DNA from: Stylophora pistillata
Taxonomy: Eukaryota
Length of the DNA: 64,000 nt
Assembly: GCF_002571385.2 (NCBI RefSeq)
Contig: NW_019217928.1
Coordinates: forward strand, 78,600-142,599
Direction: 5' to 3'
Made by a program: the position numbers and the translations under genes. Position 1 is the first letter of the stretch. The number at the start of each line of letters is the position of its first letter. Below the pieces are notes generated by a model. That model was not told the origin of the DNA. It worked only from the letters and a program-made list of their open reading frames with translations, and did not search any database. This document shows positions 1,111 to 59,300 of the stretch, in pieces.

Positions 1111-4100
1111 ATGGATCTGATAGATTTAATAGGCGACTCTAAAACAGACAGCCTGCCAGCTGGGTTTTTACGCTCGATCAAAATCAAGTACAAACAAGAA
1201 TCGTCGCGAGTGTTCCCACCAGGAACTCCGTATCATTCCACGGACCTCACTGACAAAGCTCCTCAAGTGAATCGTGGAGGTCAAAGAAGTGCCTCAGCTG
1301 CGAGTAACTCTTCTGCACCGGTAGGTTGTTAAGTCGCTGGGAATTTACATGTCATTAAAGAAAAACCTGGTATATGTTCCGCTTTCTGCCCCACACCGCA
1401 CAATAATCTAGTTTTCCGGCGAAGATGTAGCTCATCTACATTTGTTTACAGTAAAAATTCACGGGTCACTAAGTGAAGGTCAACTTAGAGAGGCGTCAAA
1501 TTACGACTGCCTTGTTCGATAGCTGATCAAAGGAGTTTCTCAGTTTTTGATTTTCGATTTCTCTTTTCATGCTGTCTAAATTAATTGGTGGCTACGTGCT
1601 ACTAATCTGAGTTCTAAATTTTGTGCAACTTTGTGAAATCTTTATACTCGTTAAAATTTTAAGGAATTTCACAATGTGCTAATCTTGTTAATTATACGTA
1701 CTTGTTTCACGACAAAAGGTAATTTACCGAAAAAAACCTTCAAAAAAAATTCTGAAAAATCTTTGCCCAAAGAGGCTAGTCCTTAATGATCTTTATTCTT
1801 TGTCCAAACTGGGTACACACTGTCGGGTAAAATTTTTAAGTTTATGGTAAGAAATCTGCTGAGGGTTTTTCTTTTAAATACAACATGGGTTAGCTCACTG
1901 GTAGCTGGCAAGGCCAATATATTACATCTACAGGTGCACCTACAATTTCACTAGCCGAGAATGCAGTTGCAGGTCTGGATTGGGCTGTTTGCAGCCATCC
2001 CTAACCCCTCCCAAAATTTAAAATTGGTCAGTGGAGTAATCACCATTAAGATTGTATAGTCAGTGAACTGGTAAAAGGATATTCTATTAAATTTGATTAC
2101 GGGTATGCACTTGACTTGGTATAATTTTAGCTTCCTCATATTTTGCCATCTCTGCATGACCATTCCTTTTTTTTAGAGTTTTATGGCATGGCATGTTCCA
2201 TCACGACTGATTCAGCAGCATAAACTTGAGCAGCCCCCTCCATGAGCAGGTAAGATCAATTGTATTGATTTAAAAAGAAAAAACAAAACCAGCATTTTTT
2301 CTTTTGTGGGGAGTGTGGGGGAAGGAGTGTTTGGGCATGATATTTTTGCTTTCAAATGTTCCTCTGAGAAATTATGCTTATGGCTGAGAAAGTGAATTTT
2401 TACTTGACAAAATGACACTGAGATGAGTTGTTCTTTTAGCTGCTTCATATTTTGCAGCCATTATATTTAATATTATTATATTGCAAGGTAGTCCAGAGAT
2501 AAATTCAAGTGTTCTGATTGGTTCTTACTTAGTGTGTATTGTGCTATGTGAACCATTTCACTAAAATGGTCACAAGGTGAGTAGTTTTGGTTACATAAGC
2601 AGACATTCAAATTGTACAAGTTTGGTTGGAGTGCCATATATTAAGTTAATTAATACTAAACTCCCTTGCTCAAGCTGTTCAGGGAAATATTGGCCCAGGT
2701 CCATACTACCAAGAACTTTGGCCAATATTCCCTTGCACAGCCCTTGCTCTTTGGTTGGTAAGTAAAATATTCAAGAAAAGTAATGGTTTTGAATTGCTTT
2801 TCTACTGAAAAAAGGTGGGTTTGTTGCACAGAGACACAAGTTAGGGTCCAGAACATCTGTACTGAGTGGACAGTCCCAGGGCAGTAAACAACTTCAACCA
2901 CCCTCCAGGGGAAACCATGATTGTGAGTTCAACTTAAAAGTACTGTTAAATAACTAAAGTCTATTTAAGGAAGCAGAATGGATTTGACTTCATATCATAA
3001 GTTATGGATACAAGCGGTGTTTTGAAATTGCCTGTTATTTTACAAGCTGTAACCAAGTGTAATTTGACAACATTTCACAACTTCACAAGTGACCAAAAAT
3101 CACAAGATGTACATGTCAAGCAGTTCGTACATTTCTTTGGTTAATACTCTTCTAAAAGCAAATTTGAACTTCCTTTAGAGCAATTTACTTGAAATACTTT
3201 TCAGAAGTTTTTGTTTACAATATAGCTGATCTTTTTATATATATTAACAACATTGACAGATGAACAAAGCTTCGTGTCTTTTCTATGTAACATAATACGC
3301 TTTACTTATCTTTAAAATTGTAAATTGGAGGGTGTAATTCAGAAATCTGGTATGGTAACATTGTATTTATAACCTGTTTATGCATTTGTAATTGAACATG
3401 TACAATAAAGATAGAAATAGATACAAAATAGTGCTGCTGCAGGAAGACAAGCTATTTTTTAAAATATTTTTTATGCAATACATAGTGCCCAGACTGCAGT
3501 CTGAAGCTAACCACTTGAGAAGAAGTCCCTTGCAAAGGCAACCCACATCAGCAGCAGCTCCAGTAAGTGATACTCAGTAACATGTCACCAAAAAATAATA
3601 CAGTTGAGCCCCTGTAACTCAAATTGCCAAGGGAAGTTGAACTTCAAGTTATTGGGGTTTTAAGTTGTAGGGGTTTTGAACAAAAAGACTAGAAACACTT
3701 GGTAAAAGAGATGTTATGCTTTTACATGCTTTATTGCAAAAAGAGCATAAAAACAACAACAACCAAAAAACAACAGATTGATTCCAGATTACAAGCCATT
3801 ATTTTTTTTCGCCAGACAGAACTGTCAAAACTGTTTGTTTATGGACATACAAATGAGTGATATTGACAAAAGTCAATTTGTCTTAATATATAAATGAGAT
3901 TAAATGTAATCTTCCAGTGCAAAATGTTATGGCTCATTAGTCCACAAAAGTGAAAATTGACTTTGAGTTAGAGAGGGTGAAATTACAAAGAAAAGTATCT
4001 GAAGGTAAGTAAAAATCACTTCAAGTTAGTTATAGGGGTTAAAGCTACAGTAAATGAGGCAAATCACTTTTGCTTTGAGGTAGCAGGGAATTGGAGTAAC

Positions 4101-23473: not shown

Positions 23474-25948
23474 ACACAAAATTTATTATGTGTTGAATCA
23501 AAATTCTAACAAATCCGAAACACCTAGCCAAGAGCTTCAAAGTAAGTCACTTAAACTGCAATTGAACTCATCTCCGTTTATGACAAAATTCCTCGCGGAG
23601 CAAATTTCCAATAACTCTGTGTAGCTAGTCCTCGTCACATGATTGCGAAACGGTTCTTCGCCTTTGCAACCGGTATTTTGGTGATAAGAGCGAAGACATT
23701 CATTAGTTTGTAAGCAACTTTATTAGGGCTTTGCACGATCTTATTCCGTACGAACGACTGTGAGCTAGCCAGGCACTTCTACACTTCTACTTCACTTCTA
23801 CACTTCTACACTTCAACACTTCTACACTTCTACACAGGCACTTCTTCACTTCTACGTGAGGGTTTGAGTTAGAAAATGATTTAAAACTCTGGAAAATTCG
23901 GGTGGTAGGTTTATGTGGCGTCCGTCTGATGAGCTTGTTTTCCCTTTCTGTCTGGTCCCAACAAATGAGATTAGTCTGATCTGCATTTAGCCCACGAAGC
24001 CTATTAGACGACTCGTGACCGACTATTTATACACAGATACGGCTTAGTTCGTTCCCCTGATTAGGCTAAATTGAATCTGCTAGGAAAAGACTAAATGCTC
24101 TCTTTTACTCGAATTCTACAGGCTGAAATACGTGCTGTAGACACTTGATACTCGGAAAGAAGCTGATAATTTCATTTGCTGAACTAAAAAAACGTGCTTG
24201 TCACTGCACAACATGAAAGATCCACCCAAATTTTGTGCTAAGTAAGAATGAGCATGCATGAGTTTATGAGATGTTTGGTAAAACTGTGGCATATCAAAAC
24301 AAATAAATTGGCCTTCTTGGTAAACAAGCGTGGCATTACGCCGACAAATCGGAGTTTAGGCTTATAATCGGATGAGCTATAGCTAATTGGAAACTTCATT
24401 GCTAGAACCTTAGGGATGTCGGTAGACGTAGTGTGGGCCCAAATTATGAAATAATAGAGGGGGAGTTTTCAGTTTTTACAGTCACTGCGGAAAAGATCCC
24501 CTTTGAAACAAGGAGACAAATTTTGTCGTTCATAACCCCAGCTTCGTTTAAACCGCAAAGGAAAAGACAGACGTTGGTAATGATGAACAAAGTAGCGAGG
24601 GTCTCACATCTGAACTCTGGCAAGGGAAACAGATTTGTGCCCCGTAACTTATATCAAAACAGTGGCGGGATAAAACGTTTTGGATCACCGGTAAATGTTC
24701 TCTCAGAGAGGCTAATCTCGGCGAATTTCAATAATTACTAGTAGTTAAAAACACTCTTCTCGAGAACGTCTTCTTTATGGTAGAGTGGTAGCCTGTTAAT
24801 ATAGGTAATCGCAAGGGGCCGAGTAAAATTATGGATTAATATCACGCGTGTTTTCAGAAGTTGCTGAAAATGCCCGAGTCGAGGGGAAAATTACTGAATT
24901 TCTGAATGCGCTCTTCGGTAATCAGTCATAGGAAGCCATTTAAAGTTGACAGAGAATCAATGGCCACAAACGCACGAATGCGCTGAATGAAATTTTATAT
25001 TTTTGCACAAAGATACCAGGACTTTGGATAGGCTTTTGATTTTAAATATCTCTCCAGTGATGCCTGCATTACTTTCAGGCAGTCGGGCTCGTATTCATCC
25101 CCGTTTTCTTTTCATAAATCGGCATAAAACTGCACCAGTGTTCGGTCGAGGACATAGCTCTCGTACTCTTCTAAATTTGCTTGGAAGTTTCTTTCATTTT
25201 TTTTTTCCTATTTAACACCTTGTGTTGTCTTGTAGGGCTGGAACGATGCAGCAAAGCAAACAGCGTTATTCAACTCAGTAATTCAACATACGCAGAGACT
25301 GAGTTAGCATGTTCCATGATCTTGAAATTGTCGAAGTAGTCAATTATAAAGGGGAAAAGTGTTCGCAAAGTGAACTTGATTACGTGCCAAAATCTGCTGG
25401 TTCAAAGGCACTAATTGGTGATGCGAAATGACAAAAAAAAATCCTAATACTTCTAAAAGAGCGAAAGGGTGACATTCTATGGTACGCTAACATTTCAATG
25501 CCATAATAAGAAGGGTCAGAACATGAAAACACGAGAATTAGTACAAAGTACATTGTGCTATCACTACAACCGTCTCCGCCGGCTAATAGGGAAAAGGGGC
25601 CGGTTTTGTTGTTATGGTTTTTCTTTTAGCAGTTGTCTTAAACCCAGCGTTAGAGGTTAATAGTTCTCTCAGATGATAGGGTCAATAAAACTCTTTACCT
25701 TGAACACAACAACATCGTAACAATGATAACATCTTACTTTGTCGGGCGAGTGCCGAACTCAACATTTATCATTTGTCCGGATCAAATGATGTACAAACAA
25801 GATGCTTTCGACATAACTGATCCAAGCATTCAACAAATATACATGAAATAGATATATATGAACTGCGGTTATGAAACGTATATGTGCACGATCCTTCGCA
25901 GTAAAGCACTATTTAAGCAATAGTGAAAATCAGACCTGAAAAAAATTC

Positions 25949-26021
25949 AGGCCTGTACGGGATTCGAACCACTGACCTCTGCGATACTAGTGCAGCGCTC
26001 TACCAATTGAGCTAACAAGCC
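25949..26021 (-). tRNA. tRNA-Thr(AGT)-like unit 1 (probable pseudo/SINE-type)
   Basis: Acceptor stem GGCTTGT/ACAGGCC, D arm GCTC/GAGC, anticodon loop CT-AGT-AT, TTCGAAT loop. Two T-stem mismatches and one anticodon-stem mismatch. T7 run 3 nt downstream. Confidence 0.6.
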
Positions 26022-26193
26022 AACTGGGAGCAGGCCATCAAATTAATTCGACATAAACCCGTAGATGATAAATCAAACAACAAACATATGAAATACATAT
26101 ATATGAACTGCGGTTATGAAACGTATATGTGCACGATCCTTCGCAGTAAAGCACTATTTAAGCAATAGTGAAAATCAGACCTGAAAAAAATTC

Positions 26194-26266
26194 AGGCCTG
26201 TACGGGATTCGAACCACTGACCTCTGCGATACTAGTGCAGCGCTCTACCAATTGAGCTAACAAGCC
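26194..26266 (-). tRNA. tRNA-Thr(AGT)-like unit 2
   Basis: Identical to unit 1. Confidence 0.6.
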
Positions 26267-26438
26267 AACTGGGAGCAGGCCATCAAATTAATTCGACATA
26301 AACCCGTAGATGATAAATCAAACAACAAACATATGAAATACATATATATGAACTGCGGTTATGAAACGTATATGTGCACGATCCTTCGCAGTAAAGCACT
26401 ATTTAAGCAATAGTGAAAATCAGACCTGAAAAAAATTC

Positions 26439-26511
26439 AGGCCTGTACGGGACTCGAACCACTGACCTCTGCGATACTAGTGCAGCGCTCTACCAATTGA
26501 GCTAACAAGCC
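26439..26511 (-). tRNA. tRNA-Thr(AGT)-like unit 3
   Basis: As unit 1, with T-loop TTCGAGT. Confidence 0.6.
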
Positions 26512-26683
26512 AACTGGGAGCAGGCCATCAAATTAATTCGACATAAACCCGTAGATGATAAATCAAACAACAAACATATGAAATACATATATATGAACTG
26601 CGGTTATGAAACGTATATGTGCACGATCCTTCGCAGTAAAGCACTATTTAAGCAATAGTGAAAATCAGACCTGAAAAAAATTC

Positions 26684-26756
26684 AGGCCTGTACGGGATTC
26701 GAACCACTGACCTCTGCGATACTAGTGCAGCGCTCTACCAATTGAGCTAACAAGCC
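26684..26756 (-). tRNA. tRNA-Thr(AGT)-like unit 4
   Basis: Identical to unit 1. Confidence 0.6.
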
Positions 26757-26928
26757 AACTGGGAGCAGGCCATCAAATTAATTCGACATAAACCCGTAGA
26801 TGATAAATCAAACAACAAACATATGAAATACATATATATGAACTGCGGTTATGAAACGTATATGTGCACGATCCTTCGCAGTAAAGCACTATTTAAGCAA
26901 TAGTGAAAATCAGACCTGAAAAAAATTC

Positions 26929-27001
26929 AGGCCTGTACGGGATTCGAACCACTGACCTCTGCGATACTAGTGCAGCGCTCTACCAATTGAGCTAACAAGC
27001 C
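26929..27001 (-). tRNA. tRNA-Thr(AGT)-like unit 5
   Basis: Identical to unit 1. Confidence 0.6.
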
Positions 27002-27174
27002 AACTGGGAGCAGGCCATCAAATTAATTCGACATAAACCCGTAGATGATAAATCAAACAACAAATATATATGAAATACATATATATGAACTGCGGTCATA
27101 TTAATTCGACATAAACCCGTAGATTTATCATCTACGGGTTTATGTCGAATTAATTTGATGGCCTGCTCCCAGTT

Positions 27175-27247
27175 GGCTTGTTAGCTCAATTGGTAGAGCG
27201 CTGCACTAGTATCGCAGAGGTCAGTGGTTCGAATCCCGTACAGGCCT
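27175..27247 (+). tRNA. tRNA-Thr(AGT)-like unit 6
   Basis: Same sequence on the plus strand. Confidence 0.6.
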
Positions 27248-27421
27248 GAATTTTTTTCAGGTCTGATTTTCACTATTGCTTAAATAGTGCTTTACTGCGA
27301 AGGATCGTGCACATATACGTTTCATAACCGCAGTTCATATATATGTATTTCATATATATTTGTTGTTTGATTTATCATCTACGGGTTTATGTCGAATTAA
27401 TTTGATGGCCTGCTCCCAGTT

Positions 27422-27494
27422 GGCTTGTTAGCTCAATTGGTAGAGCGCTGCACTAGTATCGCAGAGGTCAGTGGTTCGAATCCCGTACAGGCCT
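27422..27494 (+). tRNA. tRNA-Thr(AGT)-like unit 7
   Basis: Same sequence on the plus strand. Confidence 0.6.
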
Positions 27495-27666
27495 GAATTT
27501 TTTTCAGGTCTGATTTTCACTATTGCTTAAATAGTGCTTTACTGCGAAGGATCGTGCACATATACGTTTCATAACCGCAGTTCATATATATGTATTTCAT
27601 ATGTTTGTTGTTTGATTTATCATCTACGGGTTTATGTCGAATTAATTTGATGGCCTGCTCCCAGTT

Positions 27667-27739
27667 GGCTTGTTAGCTCAATTGGTAGAGCGCTGCACTA
27701 GTATCGCAGAGGTCAGTGGTTCGAATCCCGTACAGGCCT
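27667..27739 (+). tRNA. tRNA-Thr(AGT)-like unit 8
   Basis: Same sequence on the plus strand. Confidence 0.6.
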
Positions 27740-27911
27740 GAATTTTTTTCAGGTCTGATTTTCACTATTGCTTAAATAGTGCTTTACTGCGAAGGATCGT
27801 GCACATATACGTTTCATAACCGCAGTTCATATATATGTATTTCATATGTTTGTTGTTTGATTTATCATCTACGGGTTTATGTCGAATTAATTTGATGGCC
27901 TGCTCCCAGTT

Positions 27912-27984
27912 GGCTTGTTAGCTCAATTGGTAGAGCGCTGCACTAGTATCGCAGAGGTCAGTGGTTCGAATCCCGTACAGGCCT
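27912..27984 (+). tRNA. tRNA-Thr(AGT)-like unit 9
   Basis: Same sequence on the plus strand. Confidence 0.6.
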
Positions 27985-29714
27985 GAATTTTTTTCAGGTC
28001 TGATTTTCACTATTGCTTAAATAGTGCTTTACTGCGAAGGATCGTGCACATATATGATCCAAGCATTGTTGACTTGTAACATAGGGCTGACTACAACCAT
28101 CTCTCCCGGCTAATAGGGAAAAGGGGCCGGTTTTGTTGTTATTTTTTTTAGCAGTTGTCTCAAACCTAGCGTTAGATTTTAATAGTTCTCTTAGATGATA
28201 GGGTTGATAAAACTCTTTACCTTGAACACAACAACATCGTATCAAGGATAACATCTTACCTTGTCGGGCGAGTGCCGAACTCAACATTTATCATTTGTCC
28301 GGATCAAATGATGTACAAACGATATGCTTTCGACATAACTGATCCAAGCATTGTGCTGACTGATCCAAGCATAAGGCTGACTTCAACCATCTCCGCCGGC
28401 TAATAGGGAAAAGAGGCCGGTTTCGTTGTTATTTTTTTTTAGCAGTTGTCTTAAACCTAGCGTTAGGTTGATAAAAATCTTTACCTTGAACACAACAACA
28501 TCGTAATAATGATAACATCTTACTTTGTCGGGCGAGTGCCGAACTCAACATTTATCATTTATCATTTGTCCCGATCAAATGATGTACAAACAAGATGCTT
28601 TCGACATAACTGATCCAAGCATTTTGGAGGACACTTGTAAGATATGGCCGACTTGATGTAGGGCATAGGAAGACATGGACTCTGTTTCGCTTGTATTTGG
28701 ACTAAAAAAATGTGTGTCAGTGTAAAGTTTTATCTTTTATTTATTTATTTTTTTCATTCAAATTGTCTCAGTTCTCCCACGCTGGCGACAAATCAGTTTA
28801 AACTCAATTCTACTTTGGGTTGAGAATTTCGTAGAATACCTGTTTCCCTGGAGCTTTCTCTCCTTCTATTTGGCACCTAAATATAAACCCAGCAACACAA
28901 AGTAAAATAACTTAAACAAAAAAACAACTCCGAGTAGCTGAATTTTGCGTGAGTGGTTGCGAGATTCGATGACCTGTTGGTTAGACTTTCGCGAAAAAAC
29001 ACTTAGAAATAATGGTGAATTAAATTAAATTTAGAGTCCAGGTGAACAACTTAAAAGAGTGAAAGGTACTTCAATAGGTTTAGAGAGATCTCTGATGGTG
29101 ATTTATCAAACTAGAAGGATGTGGGACTGACGGAAACTCTGATCTGAATCTTTTATTAGGATTCCAGCTTCAGACCTTCATTACCACCTTTCGTTGTTAG
29201 GACATGCTACCGGCCTTCAATTTATTGACTTGTAAATTTCCTCTTTTAACGTGGTAGCAAGAAATCACATTATTGAGAAATGATATCAAAACAAGATCAA
29301 GATCTTTTAAGAGTTTGTTTTGTCTTGTATAGAATTGATCTCTCTATTACAAAGTTATTCGTAAATCAAAAACAGTTCCAACACCTCAACCGAGTATGTA
29401 TTTTTTGGTTTGCCCTTTATTTAACAGATGTGATGTTGCAATCAGCACAGTCTTCTCTTAAGATTTAAAACATGGAAATTGCTGACTTTCTTCATTCCCT
29501 CTGCCTTACCCGGACCAACAAGTGGAGGACGGCTGTACTTTTTTTTTTTTTTGCCCCGTTTGAACAGAAGAAAAGGATATTTACGTTGAAGAGACAACAC
29601 GGATAAACAAAGAATTGCATCCCCATAAACTGTATTTTATTCATACATGATGTAGGAATAATCGTCATAACAAGATCATTTCATACCTATGATGTTAAAT
29701 TATTCTCAGTCATA

Positions 29715-31450: not shown

Positions 31451-32446
31451 TTACATTACCCGCGCAAGTCGTCTAGGAGACCCGAAGACATTCGGGTACA
31501 CGGCCTTAAATCGCTTGCTCCGAAAAGCGAACAGAAAGGGATTCAAGGCCGAGTTTAAATAACCAATCATTAAAAGAACCACTCTGGCTTCAGGCGGGAT
31601 CGTTGCAGTGCATGACTCACACAAGACAGCCACAATGCTGACAGATGAGTAGGGAACCCAGCAAAGGAAGAAAGCGCCCACAAACATCGACGTCGTCTTA
31701 AAGGCTCGGATGTTTTTCAAATAAACTTTCCGCTCTCTTTCAGAAGGCTCTCTGTCGTTGTTCTCAGCGCGCTGACTTGAGTCGAAATTCTTCAGCTGCT
31801 TGCATACCAGGCGGTAAATCTTGAGGTGAATACCACAGGCGATTATCAGCGGTAAAATAAAATTCAAGGAGGAGCTGAGAACATGGTACACCGGTGGGAA
31901 AGGAAACAAGCATGCGTTGTCAAGAACAAAATTATGCGATGTTCGCCAGCCCATGATGGGGAGTAAGGCGAACAGGATGCTGTAGAGCCATATCATTAGA
32001 TTAATAACGATGCCTCTTTTATGAGTCATAAACCCTAAGCGGCGGTATCGGTTGAGAGGATCGCTAAGGCTTTTGTAGCGATCAACGCTCACGGCCAAAA
32101 GTGTCAAAATCGAGGTCGGTACGGTAATTAGGTAAACCGTGATCCAGGCCTTGCACATCGCCTCTCCATGGTTCCAAACCCATCCCAGAAAAAGCCCCTC
32201 TATGTCAAATGGCACCGATAGGGTCGCCGTGAGAAGGTCCGATGACGCCAAGGAGAAAATGAAAACATTTGTGGGCATTTTGCGCAGGTTTTTGTTGATA
32301 AGTATAGCTGAGCAAACCATGATGTTACCAATAACAGCTACAGCCACGATTAAGATATAACACGTCGCCACTGGATACACGAAGCTGGAAGGCAAGGGGA
32401 TAAATGACTCTGTGATACCGGGATCTTGCTTTGTTGTGTTGTTCAT
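31451..32446 (-). CDS. Rhodopsin-class (class A) GPCR, aminergic/adenosine-like orphan, 331 aa, single coding exon
   Basis: 7 TM helices with GN, LASSD, C3.25, DRY, CWVP and NPFLF motifs; N-terminal NNT/NTT sequons. A polypyrimidine-CAG acceptor at 32472 places the real start at 32446 (MNNTT), not at the ORF start. Confidence 0.92.
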   Translation of the reverse strand: MNNTTKQDPGITESFIPLPSSFVYPVATCYILIVAVAVIGNIMVCSAILINKNLRKMPTNVFIFSLASSDLLTATLSVPFDIEGLFLGWVWNHGEAMCKAWITVYLITVPTSILTLLAVSVDRYKSLSDPLNRYRRLGFMTHKRGIVINLMIWLYSILFALLPIMGWRTSHNFVLDNACLFPFPPVYHVLSSSLNFILPLIIACGIHLKIYRLVCKQLKNFDSSQRAENNDREPSERERKVYLKNIRAFKTTSMFVGAFFLCWVPYSSVSIVAVLCESCTATIPPEARVVLLMIGYLNSALNPFLFAFRSKRFKAVYPNVFGSPRRLARVM

Positions 32447-35400
32447 GTTAACCGTTTTTTCGAGGAAGTTCCTGTAATGATAAAAAAAAAAAAGAAATCT
32501 TTCAGTAAGCAGGTTATCACCTTCTTGAAAAACATTCCCTGGCTCCTTCGTTCTGATTTCAGCCTTGGAACTCCATTGCGCCCTAACAGAATATCTTACC
32601 AAGATTATAGTTTTCCGGTCAGAGGGATTGCATGCAAAGCCCCGCAATGTCGGCAATCCGAGATTCAATGCTTGCGTATTTGAACAGACAATGATTTTAT
32701 ATCCTTAGTGCGACCCCCGGGAATGCGATCTCACTAAAGCCTATTATAGAAAAGTCAGGTCACGCATTTTTTTAACATCACAAACGACCCATTCACATTG
32801 GCCAACATTAAAAGGTTATAGCCTGTTTGGTTAGTCTGGCATAAAATTTTTTCTTAGCGAGTGCTCTTGTTTTTTTTTTAGACGAACTAAATTGTGAAGC
32901 TCCCATGAAGAGAAAAAAATAACCCTACATGCCAATCAAGGTTTTTTATCAACTCTTTTTTTACTTTTCAAGGTTTTAAACTTGTGTGTAGTTTTGAGCC
33001 AACAAGGCCATTAAAGAAATAAGTTACAGCTGTTGTTTTCGATTAGAATGGAATTCTTGATGTACTATGATATTCATTTCCGGTGAGTGATTTCGGACCG
33101 GAGTAAATTGTCTTCAAAATCCAAAACGTGGCCAGTCAGGGTTCTGACCGTTTAGACTCATCCACGAAATGATTTATCTCATAATATCTGCTATGATACC
33201 AGACAACCCTTTCAAATTCACACGATTAGAAAACAACTCTGTATATCTGCCCACAAACTCACCTACTTTTTTAACTCGCTCTAAGCCGGCCGGCTTTTTT
33301 ATATGCGCGTAACAAAACTGCACGGTTATAAGACGCAATAGGAATGCTTGGAGAAGTGAAGAAAAAGGTATTTCAAAACCATGAAATTTAAGTTAAATTA
33401 ACGCCAATAATGCATAAAATATTCATTCATGGTAATTTAACTCCCAGGCACGAAAATCCAGTCAAACTGGAATTAAACTTTTAAAGTGTTAAATTGCACA
33501 CTAGAAATGTCGAGAAATCTGTTCTTTAAGAATTTTCCTTCCTCTTCGTAACAACTAGGTTCTCGATCACTTCTGTGAAAGCTTAATGCGCCAAATTGCT
33601 ACTATGAGTCTCGACTTCTTTCTTTATTTCGGATATCACTAGATAACACGCTAATATGAATACACTCTTCTAAAGAAAAAAAAAAATCCGGTGCTTATTT
33701 ACCATGCCGCGACTTCTAGGACTTAACAACATCTGATGTGACGGAGCTTGACAGCTGTTGTCAAAAATCCTTCACGAATACGACAATGGTGTTATCCAGA
33801 CTACCTCCTCTGTGATGTTATAACTAATTCAGATAATTGCAGAGATTTAACCATCTTTTTTTTTTACACTCCCCTTCAGTTTAATACCAGCGAATAACCT
33901 ATTTGTGAGTGCGAAAGCGCCGGAAAGCCTGAATCGGATATAGTGCTCAAGACACAAAAGTTAACACTCCATCGATTAATCAATCTTTATATAGAGAAAG
34001 TTGACAGTAAGGAATTTAAACCTGTTGAAAGTGGAACTATGCAAATTATGATCAGGTCATTGGAAACATAATCTTTTACAAACACTTTTTTTGCGCTCTC
34101 TCAGACGGATTTAAGATCAACCGCAGAATACAAATATGGCGAAATACTTTTTGATTCAATGCCAAATAAGGTTTTGACGTCAGTGCTCCATTTCTAGAGC
34201 GAGGGAAGTTACACGAATCTTCTTGATAAATACCCGGTAGACATAAGTTTAGATACATATGTATATTTCTATAGTCCCAGTTAACAAATGCACCAGCTAT
34301 ATTTGTTAGCATATTTGTCAGCAAAACATATTTGTTTGCGCAACTTTCCGAAGCAATCCAATTGTGTTGAGCCCAATAGCGAATAGAAACTTCTGGCAGG
34401 TTGATTTTAAAAATCAACTTTGATATTTGCCGGCTTCTATGACCGCTCATATCTACTGACTTTGCCACAATTAATGAATTGTAACTATTAGAAAATCAAC
34501 ATTAATATTCGTGGGTAATCATCTTGATTCTTTCGTTTTTGAAGAGGGTTTCAAGGGAATATTTCCTTATGAAGCTCTACATGGAAAAAATCGTACTACA
34601 GCACGACAAGAAATTTCAGGTGAAATTTCTTGTCGTGAAAGAGGTGAAACCTGGTTTATCTGCTCATATCTTCTAGATCAGAACTAAAACAAACCTGTAA
34701 TTTCAGGGGATATCAATCGAGCGAGCTAAACAGACTAAGAAGGCAAACAGAGCTCCAATGATCCCAAACCCTACATTCGATATTTCCGGGTGATTCTTAG
34801 ATTGCACGCAAACTCTACTTGTTAAACTATATCAACTAGCCAGATGCAATTGGGTCGATACCGCAAGTATAATACTTTGCACGAAACACCGCAAAAATTC
34901 AATGTTCCCCCATACTTTACAATGCGCCGAAAACACACAGAAGACAGCTCTATTACTATTGATCTGATAAGGTAGCCAGTAATAATATGGTTAACGGAAA
35001 CTTCAGCTTCCTTGTTATTGCGTTATCTATTAAAACCTGTCTGAAGCGGAAGGTAGTGAGTTACCGTGGACGTTTATTCAGCACTGGCTTTACTACGTTT
35101 CGACATTTTCTCCCCGTTTTAGTCATTGCGTTTGATCGATGCGTTTCCACTTAGCCGGCTCTTGACCGCTCTTAATGCGACTAATCTGGTATTATTTCAA
35201 AATTATAATAATAATGTAGGCCAGAAAAACAAGGTGAAAACAGTCTTGAAGACTCTAAAACCTTCAGGCTTGATCCAAGGTAATAATTTTGGGAAATGAA
35301 AGTTATTGATAGGACCGAGCAAGTTTGAGGTAGTGCACAGGGTCTACTCAGATTTTTTTGTCAGGTAGAGTCTGTGAAGGGTAATTAAAATCGCTGTATT

Positions 35401-40370: not shown

Positions 40371-41696
40371 TCACACACCCCCTTCTTGTGTAACACGACT
40401 ATTTTCAGCTGCCACACCCGGCTGTAATGACCCGCGACAGATCTTCCTAAAACAACAGCAAGCGAATGGAGACAGTTCCATATATCTCTTCCTGAATTCC
40501 TTGTCGATGCAGGCGTAAATAGCTGGCTTTATGATCCCGTAAATCTCACCAGCTACCTGCGCGCTAAATGAAACGTGGACGATTTGGGAGTATGACAGAA
40601 ACCTCATCAAATAAGGCAACAATAAAGACAGTAGGGTAAGAGCAACGAGAGGCATGGATATTGCAATGGTAATTTTTGCCTCCATTCGCGTTTCTCTTAA
40701 TTTCTGTTCGCGGGTAGATTGACTGGTGATACTCTGTGCATCTCCATCACGAACACTTCCGCCGGCAGGCCGGATAACTTTTTCGGTCTCCATATTGAAG
40801 GTTTCTAGGGGGTGTTTGGAAGAACTCTTTTTAAGGCCTTCGCAGATTGTCATATTTCCTTCATCAGGCTTCTCTTCCCGCCACTCTCCCGAATGATCCA
40901 GTTCGCTGCCATCATCATCCTTCGTATGTTGTTTCTGTTTTGATTTGTCAGCAATTTTTGTGGATCGTTTGAGTGAATGCATTTCCTTCTTCATTCGTCT
41001 CAATCGGACAAACACAGCGACACAAAGAATCGTTAAAATCAAGTTAACAGTGACATCAAAAGCGAAACCAAGTTGGATGACCAGCCACATTCCCTCCGGA
41101 CTAACTCCACATGCATTAACGTCAACCTCGCTAAACACAAAGTAGATGGAAGAGAAACCTGTGGCTATCACCCAAAGGAGAAACGTCGTAATAGCGCTGA
41201 ATTTTCTGGTATGTTTCTTTCGTCCTTTGGAGGAGGAGTTTCGTATGGCGCCCCAAGCTAGAGCGACCAAAGTAAGTGCAATAACCCTGGAGGCAATTTG
41301 ATTAAAGGTAAGGTACATCTTGCATAGAGCATTGCTAACAAACCAAACGTCTTTACCTTGATGAGAAAACGCGGCATTAGTCATAAGGTAGACAAAGATG
41401 GCTATTAAGATATCAGCACAAGCCATGCTGATCAACATGTAAAGGAAAAACGTTTTGCTGCGACCAATTCGGACGTGCTTGCACAGAATATAGAGGGCAA
41501 TGCTATTTTCTATCAAACACAAAATGAAGAGAATCCCTTTCAGAACTTTGACGAATTGGGAGCTGTTCGGATCTGGCGGCGTGGGGGTATCATAGTTATT
41601 AAGATAGTCTGAATCGCTCCATGGAAAGGGCTGAATCGTGTGAAATGTAGGCATAGCATTTGTGAAATCGGTGTATCCCTGAGTCGAATCGCCCAT
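40371..41696 (-). CDS. Highly divergent class A GPCR, 441 aa, single coding exon
   Basis: 7 hydrophobic segments, TM2 SMACADIL, C3.25, TM4 Trp, long ICL3, helix 8 DKEFRKR, C-terminal CCC. ATG at 41696 (MGDSTQG). Confidence 0.85.
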   Translation of the reverse strand: MGDSTQGYTDFTNAMPTFHTIQPFPWSDSDYLNNYDTPTPPDPNSSQFVKVLKGILFILCLIENSIALYILCKHVRIGRSKTFFLYMLISMACADILIAIFVYLMTNAAFSHQGKDVWFVSNALCKMYLTFNQIASRVIALTLVALAWGAIRNSSSKGRKKHTRKFSAITTFLLWVIATGFSSIYFVFSEVDVNACGVSPEGMWLVIQLGFAFDVTVNLILTILCVAVFVRLRRMKKEMHSLKRSTKIADKSKQKQHTKDDDGSELDHSGEWREEKPDEGNMTICEGLKKSSSKHPLETFNMETEKVIRPAGGSVRDGDAQSITSQSTREQKLRETRMEAKITIAISMPLVALTLLSLLLPYLMRFLSYSQIVHVSFSAQVAGEIYGIIKPAIYACIDKEFRKRYMELSPFACCCFRKICRGSLQPGVAAENSRVTQEGGV

Positions 41697-42141
41697 TTTC
41701 ACTCTCCACGTACTGCCGCGTCCGAAATATGAACAGCTTTTAGAAAACAAATGTTTTTAAAGTGCACTTAAATGGCCATAAACGGTTTTATTTGTTTTTG
41801 ACTGCCAGTTGTAATAGGGCACTAATGGCATGCCATTTTTTGTTCATCAAGAAAACGTCACGTAAACGTTGATAACACATCAAAATGGCAAATTGTACAT
41901 TGATGTACCTCGACTCCGCCTGATAGTTCGAAGACAAATTCCAGCCGAAGTTTTTCCCAGCATCGATTAATTTCTCAACATTGTGTTCATGCTTGTAATT
42001 TTGATACATGGATGCAATTCATTTTCACTGATGAATTTGGTGAAAACACAGGTGTGTAAACAGAACAGTCCGAAAGTATACGGAACGATTCCATTTAGAT
42101 TTAATTCTGTAGGAGAAATTTCCACCTAACATTCAATTTCA

Positions 42142-43398: not shown

Positions 43399-43826
43399 AG
43401 AGTTTGTATAGTGGTATAGTTGGACTTGCTTTTGAGCTCCGTAAATGTAAAGTTGTGTGAAATAATCAAAGAAATAAAGTCTTACCTTCATAGAGAGAAG
43501 TCTTTGTTGTTCTCCTCGCGATTTGAGGCCGTTTTGATGTGTTTTAGCTCTACGCCCTAAATTACCGTGCATAAATTACCGTGCATAAACACGGTAATTT
43601 TTAATTAATTACCGTGCATAAACACGGTAATTTTTAATTAATTACCGTGCATAAACACGGTAATTTAGGGCGTCAAGCTAAAACACATCAAAACGGCCTC
43701 AAATCGCGAGGAGAACAACAAAGACTTCTCTCTATGAAGGTAAGACTTTATTTCTTTGATTATTTCACACAACTTTACATTTACGGAGCTCAAAAGCAAG
43801 TCCAACTAAACCACTATACAAACTCT
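43399..43826. mobile_element. Kolobok-type palindromic MITE A
   Basis: TTAA|AG...CT|TTAA, ~170-bp TIRs; the centre is tandem 33-bp hairpins AATTACCGTGCATAAACACGGTAATT. Confidence 0.8.
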
Positions 43827-43836
43827 TTAAAGTGCA

Positions 43837-45318
43837 AACAACAATCAAAATAAATAAAAAAAAAGATGGCAAAAAAAAAATGGCAGGGCTACCTCAACAG
43901 CACAGCCAATTACAGCGGTCATTAGGTTTTAAAGAAAGCTCAAAAAGATTAGTTGGAATCTGATATCGTACAGAGGCTGTGTGGCCGGGAAGCTGGTGAC
44001 CCACTGGTTGCCTTGGTTTCAAGTTCTGTACCTTGCTACTTGGTGGAATTTTTCTCAGTTTTCCTCGAGTTTGACTCCGTCAGTTTTAGACTCATTTTGG
44101 AAATCATTCAACGCTTGTGTGACATCCCCATCGACAGAAAACGGAGTGACATCCCCATCGACAGAAAACGAGGGTAGCTCCATTGTTGCGCTTTAAGGAA
44201 AGCCGAGCAGTTTGTCTCTTTGCATGCAAATAAGTCATTTAATAGCTAACCACTTAAAGTGCACCTACACTCAAAAAATTTTTTTCGCTTAACGAAGTAA
44301 GCTTATTTTTTTGAGTATTTCTGCGCAAAAATTTTTTTATTTGCTCAAATCTTCAATTTTCTATGCCCAGTCAAAATACGGAAAATCGGCCGCCATCTTG
44401 CCCCACGACCGAGTTTAAAGAGGAATGGCTCTAGTGGGTAATGTGACGTCAAATCGAGAACACGAAAGTCTGCTTTTCACACATTTTCACTTGTTTGGGA
44501 AGGTTGTAGTCGATAATTGTCCGAAAATATGCCGACTAAGTGTGTTGTAGAAGGATGTAGCAACGTGCGAAATTTGCAAGAGGGTATCGCGCTCCATACA
44601 ATCTTCATACAACACACCTAGTCGGCATATTTCGGACGATATCGACGACAATCTTCCCAAACAAGTGAAAATGTGTGAGATGCAGACTTTCGTGTTCTCG
44701 ATTTGACGTCACATTACCCGCTAGAGCCATTCTTCTTTAAACTCGGTCGTGGGGCAAGATGGCTGCCGATTTTCCGTATTTTGACTGGGCATAGAAAATT
44801 GAAGATTTGAGCAAATAAAAAAATTTTTGCGCAGAGATACTCAAAAAAATAAGCTTACTTCGTTAAGCGAAAAAAATTTTTTGAGTGTAGGTGCACTTTA
44901 AGTGGTTAGCTATTAAATGACTTATTTGCATGCAAAGAGACAAACTGCTCGGCTTTCCTTAAAGCGCAACAATGGAGCTACCCTCGTTTTCTGTCGATGG
45001 GGATGTCACTCCGTTTTCTGTCGATGGGGATGTCACACAAGCGTTGAATGATTTCCAAAATGAGTCTAAAACTGACGGAGTCAAACTCGAGGAAAACTGA
45101 GAAAAATTCCACCAAGTAGCAAGGTACAGAACTTGAAACCAAGGCAACCAGTGGGTCACCAGCTTCCCGGCCACACAGCCTCTGTACGATATCAGATTCC
45201 AACTAATCTTTTTGAGCTTTCTTTAAAACCTAATGACCGCTGTAATTGGCTGTGCTGTTGAGGTAGCCCTGCCATTTTTTTTTTGCCATCTTTTTTTTTA
45301 TTTATTTTGATTGTTGTT
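43837..45318. repeat. ~1.5-kb palindrome: apparently identical ~420-bp inverted flanks around Kolobok MITE B
   Basis: 43837-44257 is the reverse complement of 44898-45318 (identical mirrored ORFs 43953/44978 and 43981/44959). Confidence 0.9.
44258..44897. mobile_element. Kolobok-type MITE B with THAP-domain remnant
   Basis: TTAA|AGTGCACC...GGTGCACT|TTAA, ~290-bp imperfect TIRs. The centre encodes MPTKCVVEGCSNVRNLQEGIALHTI from 44529, a THAP N-terminus. Confidence 0.8.
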
Positions 45319-56300: not shown

Positions 56301-59300
56301 AGACTAATATGTGTCCTTACTTGCATTGACTAAAAAATTATTGTGGGTGCTTGTATACAGGTATACAAATATGTGCATTGATACAGCAATGTCGAGTTGC
56401 ACAATTGAGCAGCCTGACCATATTATTTTCTGAAACAACTATTAATCTTGTGACCACTAGGTGACCAACATCTAATTTCTCCTCACAATATCACCCTTGA
56501 ATCACACATAAAGGTCATGAGAATAAAGGAAATGATCAGCGTAAGAGTGACCAGCATCTAATTTCTCCTCACAATATCACTCCTGAATCACACATTAAGG
56601 TCATGAGAATAAATGAAATGATCAGCGTAAGAGTGACCAGCATCTAATTTCTCCTCACAATATCACTCCTGAATCACACATTAAGGTCATGAGAATAAAT
56701 GAAATGATCAGCGTAAGAGTGACCAGCATCTAATTTCTCCTCACAATATCACCCCTGAATCACACATAAAGGTCATGAGAATAAAGGAAATGATCACCAA
56801 TCCAAGAAGCTGTTGATTGTTAAACAATTTCTCCTTCTCAGCACCTTAGGAAATATATGGAGATCAGTTGGGAGAATATGCAAACTGAAGTTTGGGTGTA
56901 AAAGGTTAAACATGGATTTGAATTGCTTTATTTTTGTAGGAACACAGAGTTTTTGTTGATGCTGAAGTTGATGTTACAAAAGATATTGTAAGTCGTGAAC
57001 GACCTCTTCGCACACGCACATCTGTTCTGCAGAGTTCCGGCAAGGTATGTGACAAAGAGGAATGATATGCTCTATACAAATAATACAACTAGTCCATAGG
57101 TGATATCTATTTGAACTTTCTGATCTCTTTAGAACGTGCTCATGGTTTGGCCTTGTTGCCAAGCCATATTGTTGTTCAGTCCAACAGACTGTGGTAATTC
57201 ATCATTTAATCATGTGTAAATGTTTTCAGCAATTTCTGAAGAATGTGCTCGCCATACTTCAATCTGTAAAAGCACAAGAGGAAGGAAAAGTAAAACAGCT
57301 TCAAAATCAAGATCCCTTTACAAATTCAGTAAGATTTTAAAGTGGCTTTTGATTTTTTTTTTGTGCCAATAAACTGAAGCTATAGTCAATGTCTCTTGGA
57401 ATTCTTTGGTTCTCAACCTTTTAACTCCCAGTTATGATGAACATGTAGCTTTTCCCTCAAATATTTAAACATTTTCCATCAAACAAGTAATAAGAATACT
57501 CAACTTTAACAAGTTGAAGTTGTTATCTTGATCTAACACCGAATTCTTGTAATTTATTTACAAGGAAATGTTTATCAGTTAGAGGGGAGAATTAACAATC
57601 AGTTTGTGAGAGTTAACTGGTTAATTGTTCTTGAAACAGGAAGCAAGAAAGAAGCCTGCAACTCCAGTGCCATACAACAGATATGATCAAGAACGATTTA
57701 GGGGAAAAGAAGGTACAGTGCAGAGCTTACAAGTAGCATTACAACATATTATTTATTACTGGTTAAAAGATACCAGTAGCAATTTTTAGTTGCTGTTTGG
57801 TTATTTTAATTTCAAAGCTAACAAACTTGCTTCTTTGGCAAACAAAAGTAGCTTGAATTAAAATGTTAGTTGTACATGTAGAAGTGAAATAGCTTTGATT
57901 TACTATTTCAACAGAAACTGAGGGCATAGTTTTGATTTACTATTTCAACAGAAACTGAGGGCTTCAAAATTGATACAATGGGAACATACCATGGCCTTAG
58001 TTTGGAATCTGTGAAGGTATGGAGTACTACTGGTAGTTTGAATCATGGAGATAGAGATTTATATACCCTTCAAACAACTGAGGCGAGATGGATATGGCTG
58101 TATCTTTTCTTAATACTTATCCACTAGACAGCTTTATTGGCCCTTTGGGTAATTGGACCCTGGATTCCAGTGAGCTAATCCCTCCAACATTATATTTTAA
58201 ACTATTTTGTTATCACTTACAGGAAGGAGTTCAGAAACCCAAGAAAGTCTTTCCCAGTCCTTCTCCTCATACACAGCCGAGCAAAGCCCCCAGGCCCAGT
58301 GAGTACTAGTAACTTCTTACAGTCCATTACAGCTTTAATGCAATATAAGCGCCCAGTTAGTAGAGTTTGGTAGAAAAAAAGTTGGAAAGTCCAGATTGGA
58401 CTCAACTTCTGCCCAAGCAGCTGCTTAATTGCTTCTCATAACAGAGCATGTGCTTGGCTAAGGATAGGCTTGCTCCTAACATTATCAGGACAAGTATCAA
58501 ACAGAGAACTGAGAAGATTAAAGATAATGTCAATCAGAGGATTATCAATTGATCCAAAACCAAATTCTCTACACGGACATCATAAGAATTGGGTGTCAGA
58601 TGGTAAGGAGAATTACTAAATGAGATTTCGGGAGTGAAAAGATTAATTTGCTTTTCTCTTGACGGTAGACACCTACATGTAGATCAAGATGGAAGTAAAT
58701 TTGTGTCAAAAACTTAGAATTTCTCAAGTTCATTAAAACAACGATAGGGATGTTTTTTTTCAGTCTTGATCTTTATTGACCAAAAGTTATCATGCAACAG
58801 TATTAATAAATTATTAACTCCCATAATTTACATGTGCAACAGTCTATGACAATTTATATTTTCAGTTCCTCAAAAGCCAAATCATCCTCCAAAACGAGGT
58901 AAGAGTGTGAACATATACAGTTTTTTCTTACTGTTTGTTTTTCCATTTATGAATAAGTCTTAAAACTTTAAGAGTTCACATGTGGATTGGTTTAGAGGGA
59001 CTTTTCTAACTTGTACACACCCCCCCCCTCCCACAAAAACAAACCAACAAACAAACAAAAACAAAGGCAAAAACAAAGCGAAACAAAACAAAAAAAAACA
59101 AATCAAATCAATCCACAAAAGAAGACAGATCAGAGAATAAAAAAACCTTCCAAACAGTTGAATGCCTGTAACTGTAATAGTTAAATAATTTGGATATATC
59201 AACAAAGTTGAAATGGTAAATTGGCCACCGTAACGATTACTGTAATAATTACATTGTTTTACATAACGAAGCTACATGTAATTCTCGGAGATTTCAGAGC

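What the first reader, a model, noticed from the sequence alone, without database searches (positions are those of the whole stretch)
25818..28067. Nine-copy tRNA-like array inserted as one event in two inverted arms: candidate twin-primed retrotransposition of a circular/multimeric tRNA-like RNA
Seen: nine nearly identical 245-bp units, each with a tRNA-Thr(AGT)-like cloverleaf (A/B boxes, broken T stem). Five lie on the minus strand and four on the plus strand, with 5' ends facing the centre. The whole block is flanked by a perfect 13-bp duplication, TGATCCAAGCATT. The next host-repeat copies (ending 28352 and 28623) carry this site without an insert, which supports a real TSD. Reading inward from each TSD 3' end, both arms are the cDNA (antisense) of the tRNA-sense RNA. 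Established: this is the geometry of twin-primed target-primed reverse transcription. Retrozymes are tandem non-autonomous repeats of similar size with circular RNA intermediates, proposed to be mobilised by Penelope-like elements. Inference: this is a retrozyme-like mobile RNA built on a tRNA fold rather than a hammerhead, unlike an ordinary monomeric, tailed SINE. Caveat: a T7 run right after each cloverleaf should stop Pol III, so multimers need read-through or Pol II.
Basis: partly seen in the sequence, partly recalled or inferred. Interest (0 to 1): 0.9.

Follow-up and report, generated by a model that had tools for sequence, protein, structure and literature searches.

The report
tRNA-bearing repeat inserted Penelope-style
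A block of nine copies of a 245-base coral repeat, each carrying a worn tRNA look-alike, was pasted in as one head-to-head unit by the copying machinery of Penelope-like jumping genes, which makes it a ribozyme-free cousin of the "retrozyme" repeats; a circular RNA template is not supported.

Summary
Window 25831-28054 has five minus-strand and four plus-strand 245-bp units. Each carries a tRNA-Thr(AGT)-like module, and the 5' ends face the centre. A perfect 13-bp duplication flanks the block, and two neighbouring copies of a local host repeat show the empty site.

The same unit forms at least 39 dispersed arrays at about 100% identity. In 11 of 13 two-armed inserts I could read, one outer end lies at unit phase 198-201 and the other at 242-250. 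That is a ~46-nt "tail" at one end only. With variable 5' ends, head-to-head arms, 10-14-bp duplications and T-rich nick sites, this is the published signature of Penelope-like elements (PLEs), not LINE-type twin priming.

There is no hammerhead. A rare junction variant (2 of 102 junctions) sits mirrored in both arms here. So both arms copy the same stretch of a heterogeneous multimer, not a monomer circle.

Relatives (72-84% identity) in other coral metagenomes keep the architecture and the cloverleaf, with compensatory changes.

The partner PLE, RNA form and copy number per arm are unverified. The scan found this family before on other DNA of this genome. My searches found no paper describing it.

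The parts
25553..25830 (+). Host repeat copy 1 (local ~270-bp tandem repeat). Its last 13 nt are the target site.
   Evidence: the repeat finder families D3-D6. There are only 3 copies in the genome, all at this locus.
25818..25830 (.). Left copy of the 13-bp target-site duplication TGATCCAAGCATT.
25831..25878 (-). The 'tail': the extra ~48 nt (unit phases 199-245, a variant version) present at this outer end only.
   Evidence: Phase mapping and junction table. The right arm stops at phase 198.
25831..27099 (-). Left arm: five 245-bp units plus a partial sixth, antisense on the + strand, with its 3' end at the left flank.
25949..27001 (-). Five tRNA-Thr(AGT)-like modules: 25949-26021, 26194-26266, 26439-26511, 26684-26756, 26929-27001.
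   Evidence: ARAGORN; Rfam tRNA 47.6-48.9 bits.
27064..27069 (-). Rare 247-bp-type junction variant (ATATAT for ATGT), at the first unit junction from the centre in the left arm.
   Evidence: 2 of 102 junctions in 21 loci carry it, both here.
27097..27102 (.). Internal deletion joint in the left arm: unit phases 36-205 are missing, including one tRNA-like module.
   Evidence: left arm compared with right arm from the centre.
27096..27158 (.). Centre: 29-nt palindrome arms (27096-27124 / 27130-27158) around the 5-nt loop TTATC, placed at a natural gat..atc of the unit. The two arms' 5' ends lie at phases ~11 and ~6.
   Evidence: the repeat finder I15.
27122..28054 (+). Right arm: 3.8 units in sense on the + strand. 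Its 3' end lies at unit phase 198 (tail-less end).
27175..27984 (+). Four tRNA-Thr(AGT)-like modules: 27175-27247, 27422-27494, 27667-27739, 27912-27984.
27354..27359 (+). The same rare junction variant, at the first unit junction from the centre in the right arm (mirror of 27064-27069).
28055..28067 (.). Right copy of the target-site duplication.
28068..28623 (+). Host repeat copies 2 and 3, with uninterrupted (empty) target 13-mers at 28340-28352 and 28611-28623.

Best explanation
The block is one retrotransposition event of a non-autonomous, non-coding 245-bp tandem element that carries a tRNA-like module. It was integrated by the reverse transcriptase/GIY-YIG endonuclease of a Penelope-like element (PLE).

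Inferred course of events:
1. A multi-unit, slightly heterogeneous RNA was made. It must read through the T7 run after each tRNA-like module, so RNA polymerase II or read-through transcription is the likely source.
2. This RNA was bound by a PLE enzyme.
3. Both target strands were nicked 13 bp apart, each after a T-rich stretch.
4. DNA synthesis was primed on both strands without homology to the target. One strand started at the site near unit phase 245 (tail-bearing left end). The other started at the site near phase 198, inside the loop of a conserved stem (tail-less right end).
5. Both cDNAs ran to the same 5' end of the template (phases 6-11). They were joined head to head at a 3-bp inverted microhomology.
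6. About 170 nt next to the resulting palindrome was lost from the left arm, during or after the event.

Shown here: the anatomy, the duplication, the empty paralogous sites, the family-wide end rules, the lack of a hammerhead, and the conservation of the architecture and the cloverleaf in other corals.

Inferred: the enzyme, the RNA species, and the order of steps.
For: Genome-wide spread: at least 206 unit matches in at least 39 dispersed arrays. More than 110 units are 100% identical, which points to recent activity.

Own mapping of 20 fetched loci:
- There are 13 two-armed inserts, all head to head.
- Ten have a perfect 10-14-bp duplication and canonical ends.
- Outer ends fall only at phases 198-201 or 242-250.
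- In 11 of 13 one end is of each kind and in none are the ends alike (chance 0.0005 if the choice were free).
- 5' ends are scattered, with joints of 0-4 nt microhomology or filler.
- 14 of 20 primer ends are T (p = 0.0004).

Published PLE hallmarks that these match:
- 5' truncation, partial tandems, an adjacent inverted 5'-truncated copy, and a 30-40-bp tail at only one end (PMC8557442; PMC3846280).
- In vitro, a PLE protein cuts and extends both strands and starts at two adjacent internal RNA sites with no homology to the target. The tail is the stretch between those sites, and cutting prefers ATT (PMC11167929).

Machinery present in this genome: GIY-YIG hits (90 matches, 1590 candidates) and hammerhead arrays.

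Other corals: L052, a metagenome contig from another coral, holds a 77%-identical relative. It repeats the whole pattern: a 13-bp duplication, head-to-head arms, and one tail-bearing and one tail-less end.

Mirrored rare variant.
Against: - No autonomous PLE sharing sequence with the unit was identified.
- The tail is 46-48 nt, a little longer than the published 30-40.
- No hammerhead is present, although canonical PLEs have one. Naiad/Chlamys PLEs lack it too.
- In vitro both start sites are used on both strands. The strict one-of-each rule seen here is therefore not predicted by simple independent priming.
- The RNA data neither show a multimeric transcript nor exclude DNA carry-over.
- The copy number per arm is unverified.
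Confidence: 0.8

Rival explanations
1. Retrozyme proper. The template is a unit-length circular RNA, cut out by RNase P/Z in place of a hammerhead and then ligated. It is copied by rolling-circle reverse transcription, which yields the multimers.
For: Arrays contain complete unit junctions, and unit RNA is strongly structured (z = -4.4). The cloverleaf is conserved with compensatory changes. One arm's 5' end lies exactly at tRNA position 1 (L033) and one exactly after position 73 (L037). Coral hammerhead retrozymes of 225-245 nt do form circles (PMC7229834).
Against: A monomer circle gives identical units. Here one junction per arm carries a variant found nowhere else in 94 junctions of other loci, and the rest are canonical. 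L049 has units that differ at phase 174 within one arm. RNase P/Z products carry 5'-phosphate and 3'-OH, not the ends that the tRNA ligase RtcB joins (own knowledge). No circle was seen. PLE-type tandems form without circles (PMC8557442).
Confidence: 0.12
2. LINE-type twin priming, as for 5'-inverted L1 insertions, acting on a tRNA-derived SINE-like RNA.
For: Head-to-head geometry, a target-site duplication, variable 5' ends and microhomology joints are also the features of L1 twin priming (own knowledge).
Against: There is no poly(A) or simple-repeat 3' tail. There are two fixed start sites ~46 nt apart with a one-of-each rule. Nearly every readable insert is two-armed, against a minority for L1. 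Both arms cover the same 5' stretch of template, whereas twin priming copies different stretches. A T7 run sits inside the unit.
Confidence: 0.05
3. Not a mobile insertion. It would be an ordinary tRNA gene cluster, a DNA-level fold-back duplication, or an assembly chimera of a collapsed repeat.
For: The assembly is short-read based, and arrays of identical units cannot be resolved by such reads. Several other arrays end in N gaps. L044 shows a duplicated flank beside a 1-N gap.
Against: The exact 13-bp duplication has two empty paralogous sites. Ten further loci show the same geometry with their own duplications, as does an independent metagenome contig (L052). The tRNA-like module has a broken T stem here, and in relatives it has C33 and varying anticodons AGT/GGT/CGT, so it is not a decoding tRNA.
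Confidence: 0.03

Closest known systems
Penelope-like element insertions (pLTR structures) and their non-autonomous derivatives, e.g. MRC1/Chlamys-derived multicopy head-to-tail inserts (PMC8557442; PMC3846280; PMC11167929)
   Same: Variable 5' truncation; head-to-tail tandems; an adjacent inverted 5'-truncated copy; palindromic or microhomology centre joints; an extension ('tail') at one end only; a target duplication of variable, moderate length; AT/T-rich nick sites; starts without homology to the target.
   Different: The unit is 245 bp, non-coding and built around a tRNA-like module with its own T-run. There is no hammerhead. The tail is ~46-48 nt. No sequence link to an autonomous PLE has been shown yet.
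Metazoan non-LTR retrozymes (Cervera and de la Pena 2020, PMC7229834), including coral repeats of 225-245 nt
   Same: Small (170-400 bp), low-GC (40%), non-coding tandem repeats, dispersed with target duplications longer than 4 bp. The RNA is strongly structured. PLEs are the proposed mobiliser.
   Different: The defining type I hammerhead is absent. A tRNA-like cloverleaf stands in the unit instead. Circular RNA has not been shown, and this insert argues against a monomer circle.
tRNA-derived SINEs
   Same: A tRNA-related module with intact A and B boxes. The element is non-autonomous, retroposed and flanked by a target duplication.
   Different: Inserts are multimers, not monomers. There is no LINE-type 3' tail. 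A T7 run directly after the tRNA-like part would stop RNA polymerase III before the reverse-transcription start sites. Inverted arms are the rule.
L1 twin priming (5' inversion) - from own knowledge
   Same: Both target strands prime cDNA, and the 5' ends meet in the middle.
   Different: See the second rival: no A tail, two fixed internal start sites, unlike ends as a rule, and arms that overlap in template content.

Membership tests
PLE-mobilised element (PLE insertion signature) | Variable 5' truncation with fixed 3' ends | tested here: met
   5' ends are scattered over the unit. 3' ends lie only at phases 198-201 or 242-250, apart from 2 odd ends.
PLE-mobilised element (PLE insertion signature) | Partial or multiple tandems plus an adjacent inverted 5'-truncated copy (head to head) | tested here: met
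   13 two-armed inserts among 20 loci, all head to head. L051, L052 and L057 from other corals show the same.
PLE-mobilised element (PLE insertion signature) | A 30-40-bp 'tail' at only one end of the insert | tested here: met
   A ~46-48-nt tail at exactly one end in 11 of 13 two-armed inserts and in L052. It is slightly longer than published.
PLE-mobilised element (PLE insertion signature) | Sequence similarity of the passenger's 3' region to an autonomous PLE of the same genome | not tested
There is no PLE ORF in the held DNA.
PLE-mobilised element (PLE insertion signature) | Hammerhead motif in the repeat (canonical PLE clades only; Naiad/Chlamys lack it) | tested here: not met
   No Rfam hammerhead at E<=1 in 25000-29000, nor at gathering score in 143 kb. 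No CUGANGA core on either strand.
Retrozyme (metazoan, non-LTR) | Type I hammerhead ribozyme in each unit | tested here: not met
   True hammerhead arrays of 254-bp spacing exist elsewhere in the genome.
Retrozyme (metazoan, non-LTR) | Unit-length circular RNA in vivo | tested here: inconclusive
   RNA libraries hold unit sequence on both strands, with a profile like that of DNA. Nothing tells circles from multimers or DNA carry-over.
Retrozyme (metazoan, non-LTR) | Small low-GC non-coding tandem repeats dispersed with target duplications | tested here: met
   245 bp, 40% GC; at least 39 loci; duplications of 10-14 bp.
tRNA-derived SINE | Monomeric insert with a LINE-derived or A-rich 3' tail, transcribed whole by RNA polymerase III | tested here: not met
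   Inserts are multimers. The ends are not A-rich. The T7 run after the tRNA-like part is invariant in 9 aligned relatives.
Functional tRNA-Thr gene cluster | Canonical cloverleaf, U33, and an anticodon kept by selection | tested here: not met
   Here 2 of 5 T-stem pairs are broken (by hand), and the 31-39 mismatch occurs in all relatives. Relatives have C33 and anticodons GGT or CGT.

The most novel reading that the evidence does not exclude
The tRNA-like module is the working replacement for the hammerhead. Host RNase P and RNase Z would cut multi-unit transcripts at the cloverleaf into defined RNAs, possibly later circularised, that the PLE enzyme copies. That would make a ribozyme-free 'tRNA-retrozyme' class shared by stony corals.

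A second novel point: the strict one-tailed/one-tail-less rule would mean the two ends of a PLE insert are made by coupled, unlike steps. For example, one end could be set by the start of reverse transcription and the other by endonuclease resolution at the tail.
Probability: 0.2. Interest if true: 0.8.

Novelty: new variant of a known kind. Interest (0 to 1): 0.6.

Why it matters
How PLEs integrate is poorly understood, and the link between retrozyme-like tandem repeats and PLEs has rested on co-occurrence (PMC7761336).

- This young, nearly mutation-free family gives clean natural insertion products. They show two start sites, priming on both strands, T-rich nicks and head-to-head joining. 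These agree with the only in vitro PLE study.
- It adds a rule that study did not predict: the two ends are always unlike.
- It shows that a hammerhead is not needed for this way of life, and that a tRNA fold is kept by selection in its place. That makes a role for host tRNA-processing enzymes or RNA polymerase III factors directly testable.
- Practically, hundreds of such modules will be miscounted as tRNA-Thr genes in coral genome annotations.

Tried and rejected
- **Partner PLE.** Long ORFs in the window, the 20 loci and the 9 metagenome contigs are host genes or unrelated: GPCRs, a permease, LPMO, a TNP-like transposase.
- **ORF relic.** In the relatives an open frame of 30-66 codons starts with an ATG in the loop of the conserved stem. 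It looked like a relic of a PLE ORF start. Searching it against the genome gave only E>=0.007 hits with stops and no long frame. The idea is not supported.
- **Reads.** Multi-mapping makes depth uninterpretable. No shown joint gives an empty allele (335 joints were not shown). The apparent 'begin' sites coincide with the borders of similarity to sister families (72% of RNA reads run on unlike), so I do not read them as RNA ends.
- **Rfam MIR8562/mir-10 hits at the centre.** They are below their gathering scores and merely reflect the palindrome.
- **Host repeat as a mobile element.** Rejected: it has 3 copies, all local.
- **Enrichment of 5' ends at the tRNA borders (phases 56 and 129).** There are only 2-3 exact cases, too few to conclude anything.
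- **Literature.** Seven searches found no description of a tRNA-bearing PLE passenger. The library lacks most subscription journals and Repbase/Dfam.


Full report
**What is there.**
Window 25831-28054 (2,224 bp, 40% GC, no N) consists of a 245-bp unit repeated 5.1 times on the minus strand and 3.8 times on the plus strand, 99% matching.
- ARAGORN finds nine tRNA-Thr(AGT), five minus and four plus. Rfam's tRNA model scores them 47.6-48.9 bits.
- Read by hand, the acceptor and D stems pair and the A and B boxes are intact. Two of five T-stem pairs are broken, 31-39 is A.C, and a T7 run follows.
- The tRNA 5' ends face the centre.
- The block is flanked by TGATCCAAGCATT at 25818-25830 and 28055-28067.
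- It sits at the end of the first of three copies of a ~270-bp repeat. The other two copies end in the same 13-mer, uninterrupted, at 28340-28352 and 28611-28623.
- That repeat occurs nowhere else in the 398-Mb genome, so these are genuine paralogous empty sites.
- The insert is intergenic, 3.4 kb from a rhodopsin-type receptor ORF.

Two details were missed: the arms' outer ends lie at different unit phases, and the left arm lacks ~170 nt beside the centre.

**The family.**
The genome is a stony coral; earlier notes of this scan name Stylophora pistillata.
- The unit gives at least 206 matches in at least 39 dispersed arrays, and over 110 units are 100% identical.
- I fetched 20 loci and mapped every base to unit phase.
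- Thirteen inserts have two arms, always head to head.
- Ten of them have perfect duplications of 10-14 bp at the exact borders.
- Outer ends fall in two narrow clusters. One is at phases 198-201, inside the loop of a stem. The other is at phases 242-250.
- In 11 of 13 two-armed inserts one end is of each kind. The other two have one odd end, and none has two like ends. If the choice were free the chance is 0.0005.
- So a ~46-48-nt 'tail' is present at one end only. Here it is 25831-25878.
- Inner (5') ends are scattered. They are joined with 0-4 nt of microhomology, a few filler bases or stutter.
- The 3' ends of both target primers are T in 14 of 20 cases (p = 0.0004).
- There is no homology between primer ends and the unit.
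- Most apparently one-armed arrays end in N gaps, so two arms may be the norm.

**Comparison with the literature.**
- Craig et al. 2021 (PMC8557442) and Arkhipova et al. 2013 (PMC3846280) define PLE insertions by 5' truncation, partial tandems, an adjacent inverted 5'-truncated copy, palindromes at the inverted joint, and a 30-40-bp tail at only one end.
- Frangieh et al. 2024 (PMC11167929) showed that a purified PLE protein cuts and extends both strands. It starts reverse transcription at two adjacent internal RNA sites without homology to the target. The tail is the stretch between those sites, and cutting prefers ATT.
- Every one of these features is met here.
- GIY-YIG endonuclease matches and hammerhead arrays are abundant elsewhere in this genome.
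- L1-type twin priming explains the geometry, but not the two fixed start sites, the unlike ends or the lack of an A tail.

**No ribozyme; a conserved tRNA fold.**
- No hammerhead or other self-cleaver was found, and no CUGANGA core on either strand.
- A scan of metagenome contigs with a 25-nt core gave nine contigs with relatives of 72-84% identity.
- The flanks of L052 have no orthologue in this genome, so it comes from another coral.
- L052 repeats the whole pattern: a 13-bp duplication, head-to-head arms, and one tailed and one tail-less end.
- Older relatives at 78-87% identity also fill this genome.
- In a 9-sequence alignment the cloverleaf, a 6-bp hairpin, a 7-bp stem enclosing the tail-less start site, and a tail hairpin are 90% paired, against 30-44% for slid controls. 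Six pairs show compensatory changes.
- The T-run is invariant.
- The relatives have an intact T stem but C33 and anticodons GGT or CGT. The fold, not decoding, is kept.
- The broken T stem is a derived trait of the young 245-bp subfamily.

**The template.**
- Among 102 internal unit junctions in 21 loci, a 2-bp-longer variant occurs twice. Both are in this window, at the first junction from the centre in each arm (27064-27069 and 27354-27359).
- Both arms also stop within 5 nt of each other (phases 11 and 6), at a natural gat..atc.
- Hence both arms copy the same 5' stretch of one heterogeneous multi-unit template, or one arm copied the other by snap-back.
- A unit-length circle copied by rolling would give identical junctions.
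- L049 likewise has unlike units within one arm.
- Because the T7 run lies upstream of both start sites, the template must come from read-through or RNA polymerase II transcription. This is an inference.

**Reads.**
- A contig of run X1 crosses the left junction without a difference.
- Poly(A) and random-primed RNA libraries hold unit sequence on both strands, with a profile along the unit like that of DNA runs.
- Most RNA reads come from sister families.
- This neither shows nor excludes expression, multimers or circles.

**Verdict.**
The partner PLE, the RNA species and the copy number per arm remain open.

Earlier agents of this scan reached the same PLE reading on other windows of this genome. 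I re-derived it independently from 20 loci. I add the unlike-ends statistics, the mirrored-variant argument against a monomer circle, and the cross-coral conservation with covariation.

Noticed in passing
window 28338-28382: A 21-bp tandem duplication (ACTGATCCAAGCAT..GCTG) sits exactly at the boundary of host-repeat copies 2 and 3. The same 13-mer that served as target is therefore locally duplicated with 8 nt between the copies. It could be a slippage product or a footprint.
   Followed up: no
window 31451-32668 (-) and 40371-41750 (-): Two intronless ORFs of 405 and 459 aa with rhodopsin-family 7TM domains (Pfam 7tm_1, E 2e-51 and 5e-10). These are GPCR genes downstream of the insert.
   Followed up: partly
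window 43857-45298: Nested inverted pairs: a 27-bp tandem at 44119-44170 and its reverse complement at 44985-45036, plus A10TGGC at 43857 and its complement at 45270. This looks like the terminal inverted repeats of a small DNA transposon or fold-back element. A perfect 33-bp x 2.8 tandem lies at 43574-43666.
   Followed up: no
window 56461-56796: An 86-bp tandem repeat, 3.9 copies, 96% matching. Not examined.
   Followed up: no
L044 3068-4378 and 5314-6624: A 1.3-kb stretch, including the left flank and the start of an array, is present twice at 99.7% identity, separated by a single N. This is probably a scaffolding or haplotype redundancy in the assembly, so L044's two arrays are not independent.
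   Followed up: partly
G000:C28:1248043-1249111 and 1250343-1250687: A hammerhead (Rfam Hammerhead_1) array with 254-bp spacing lies 1.2 kb from units of the older tRNA-bearing family. Several hammerhead hits also occur as inverted pairs (e.g. C86:195389- / 195638+). This suggests that the true retrozymes of this genome insert head to head as well.
   Followed up: no
window 25831-25860; L043 about 3775-3800; L046 about 3784-3800: The rare ATATAT-type tail variant, almost absent from internal junctions, appears in 3 of about 12 terminal tails. It may be slippage in the first nucleotides made after initiation.
   Followed up: partly
L051 1640-1700 (= L058): In another coral's relative, a perfect palindromic centre is again followed in one arm by a deletion that removes the tRNA-like module, as at window 27099/27100. 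Possible causes are reverse transcriptase skipping a stable domain, or palindrome-driven deletion.
   Followed up: no
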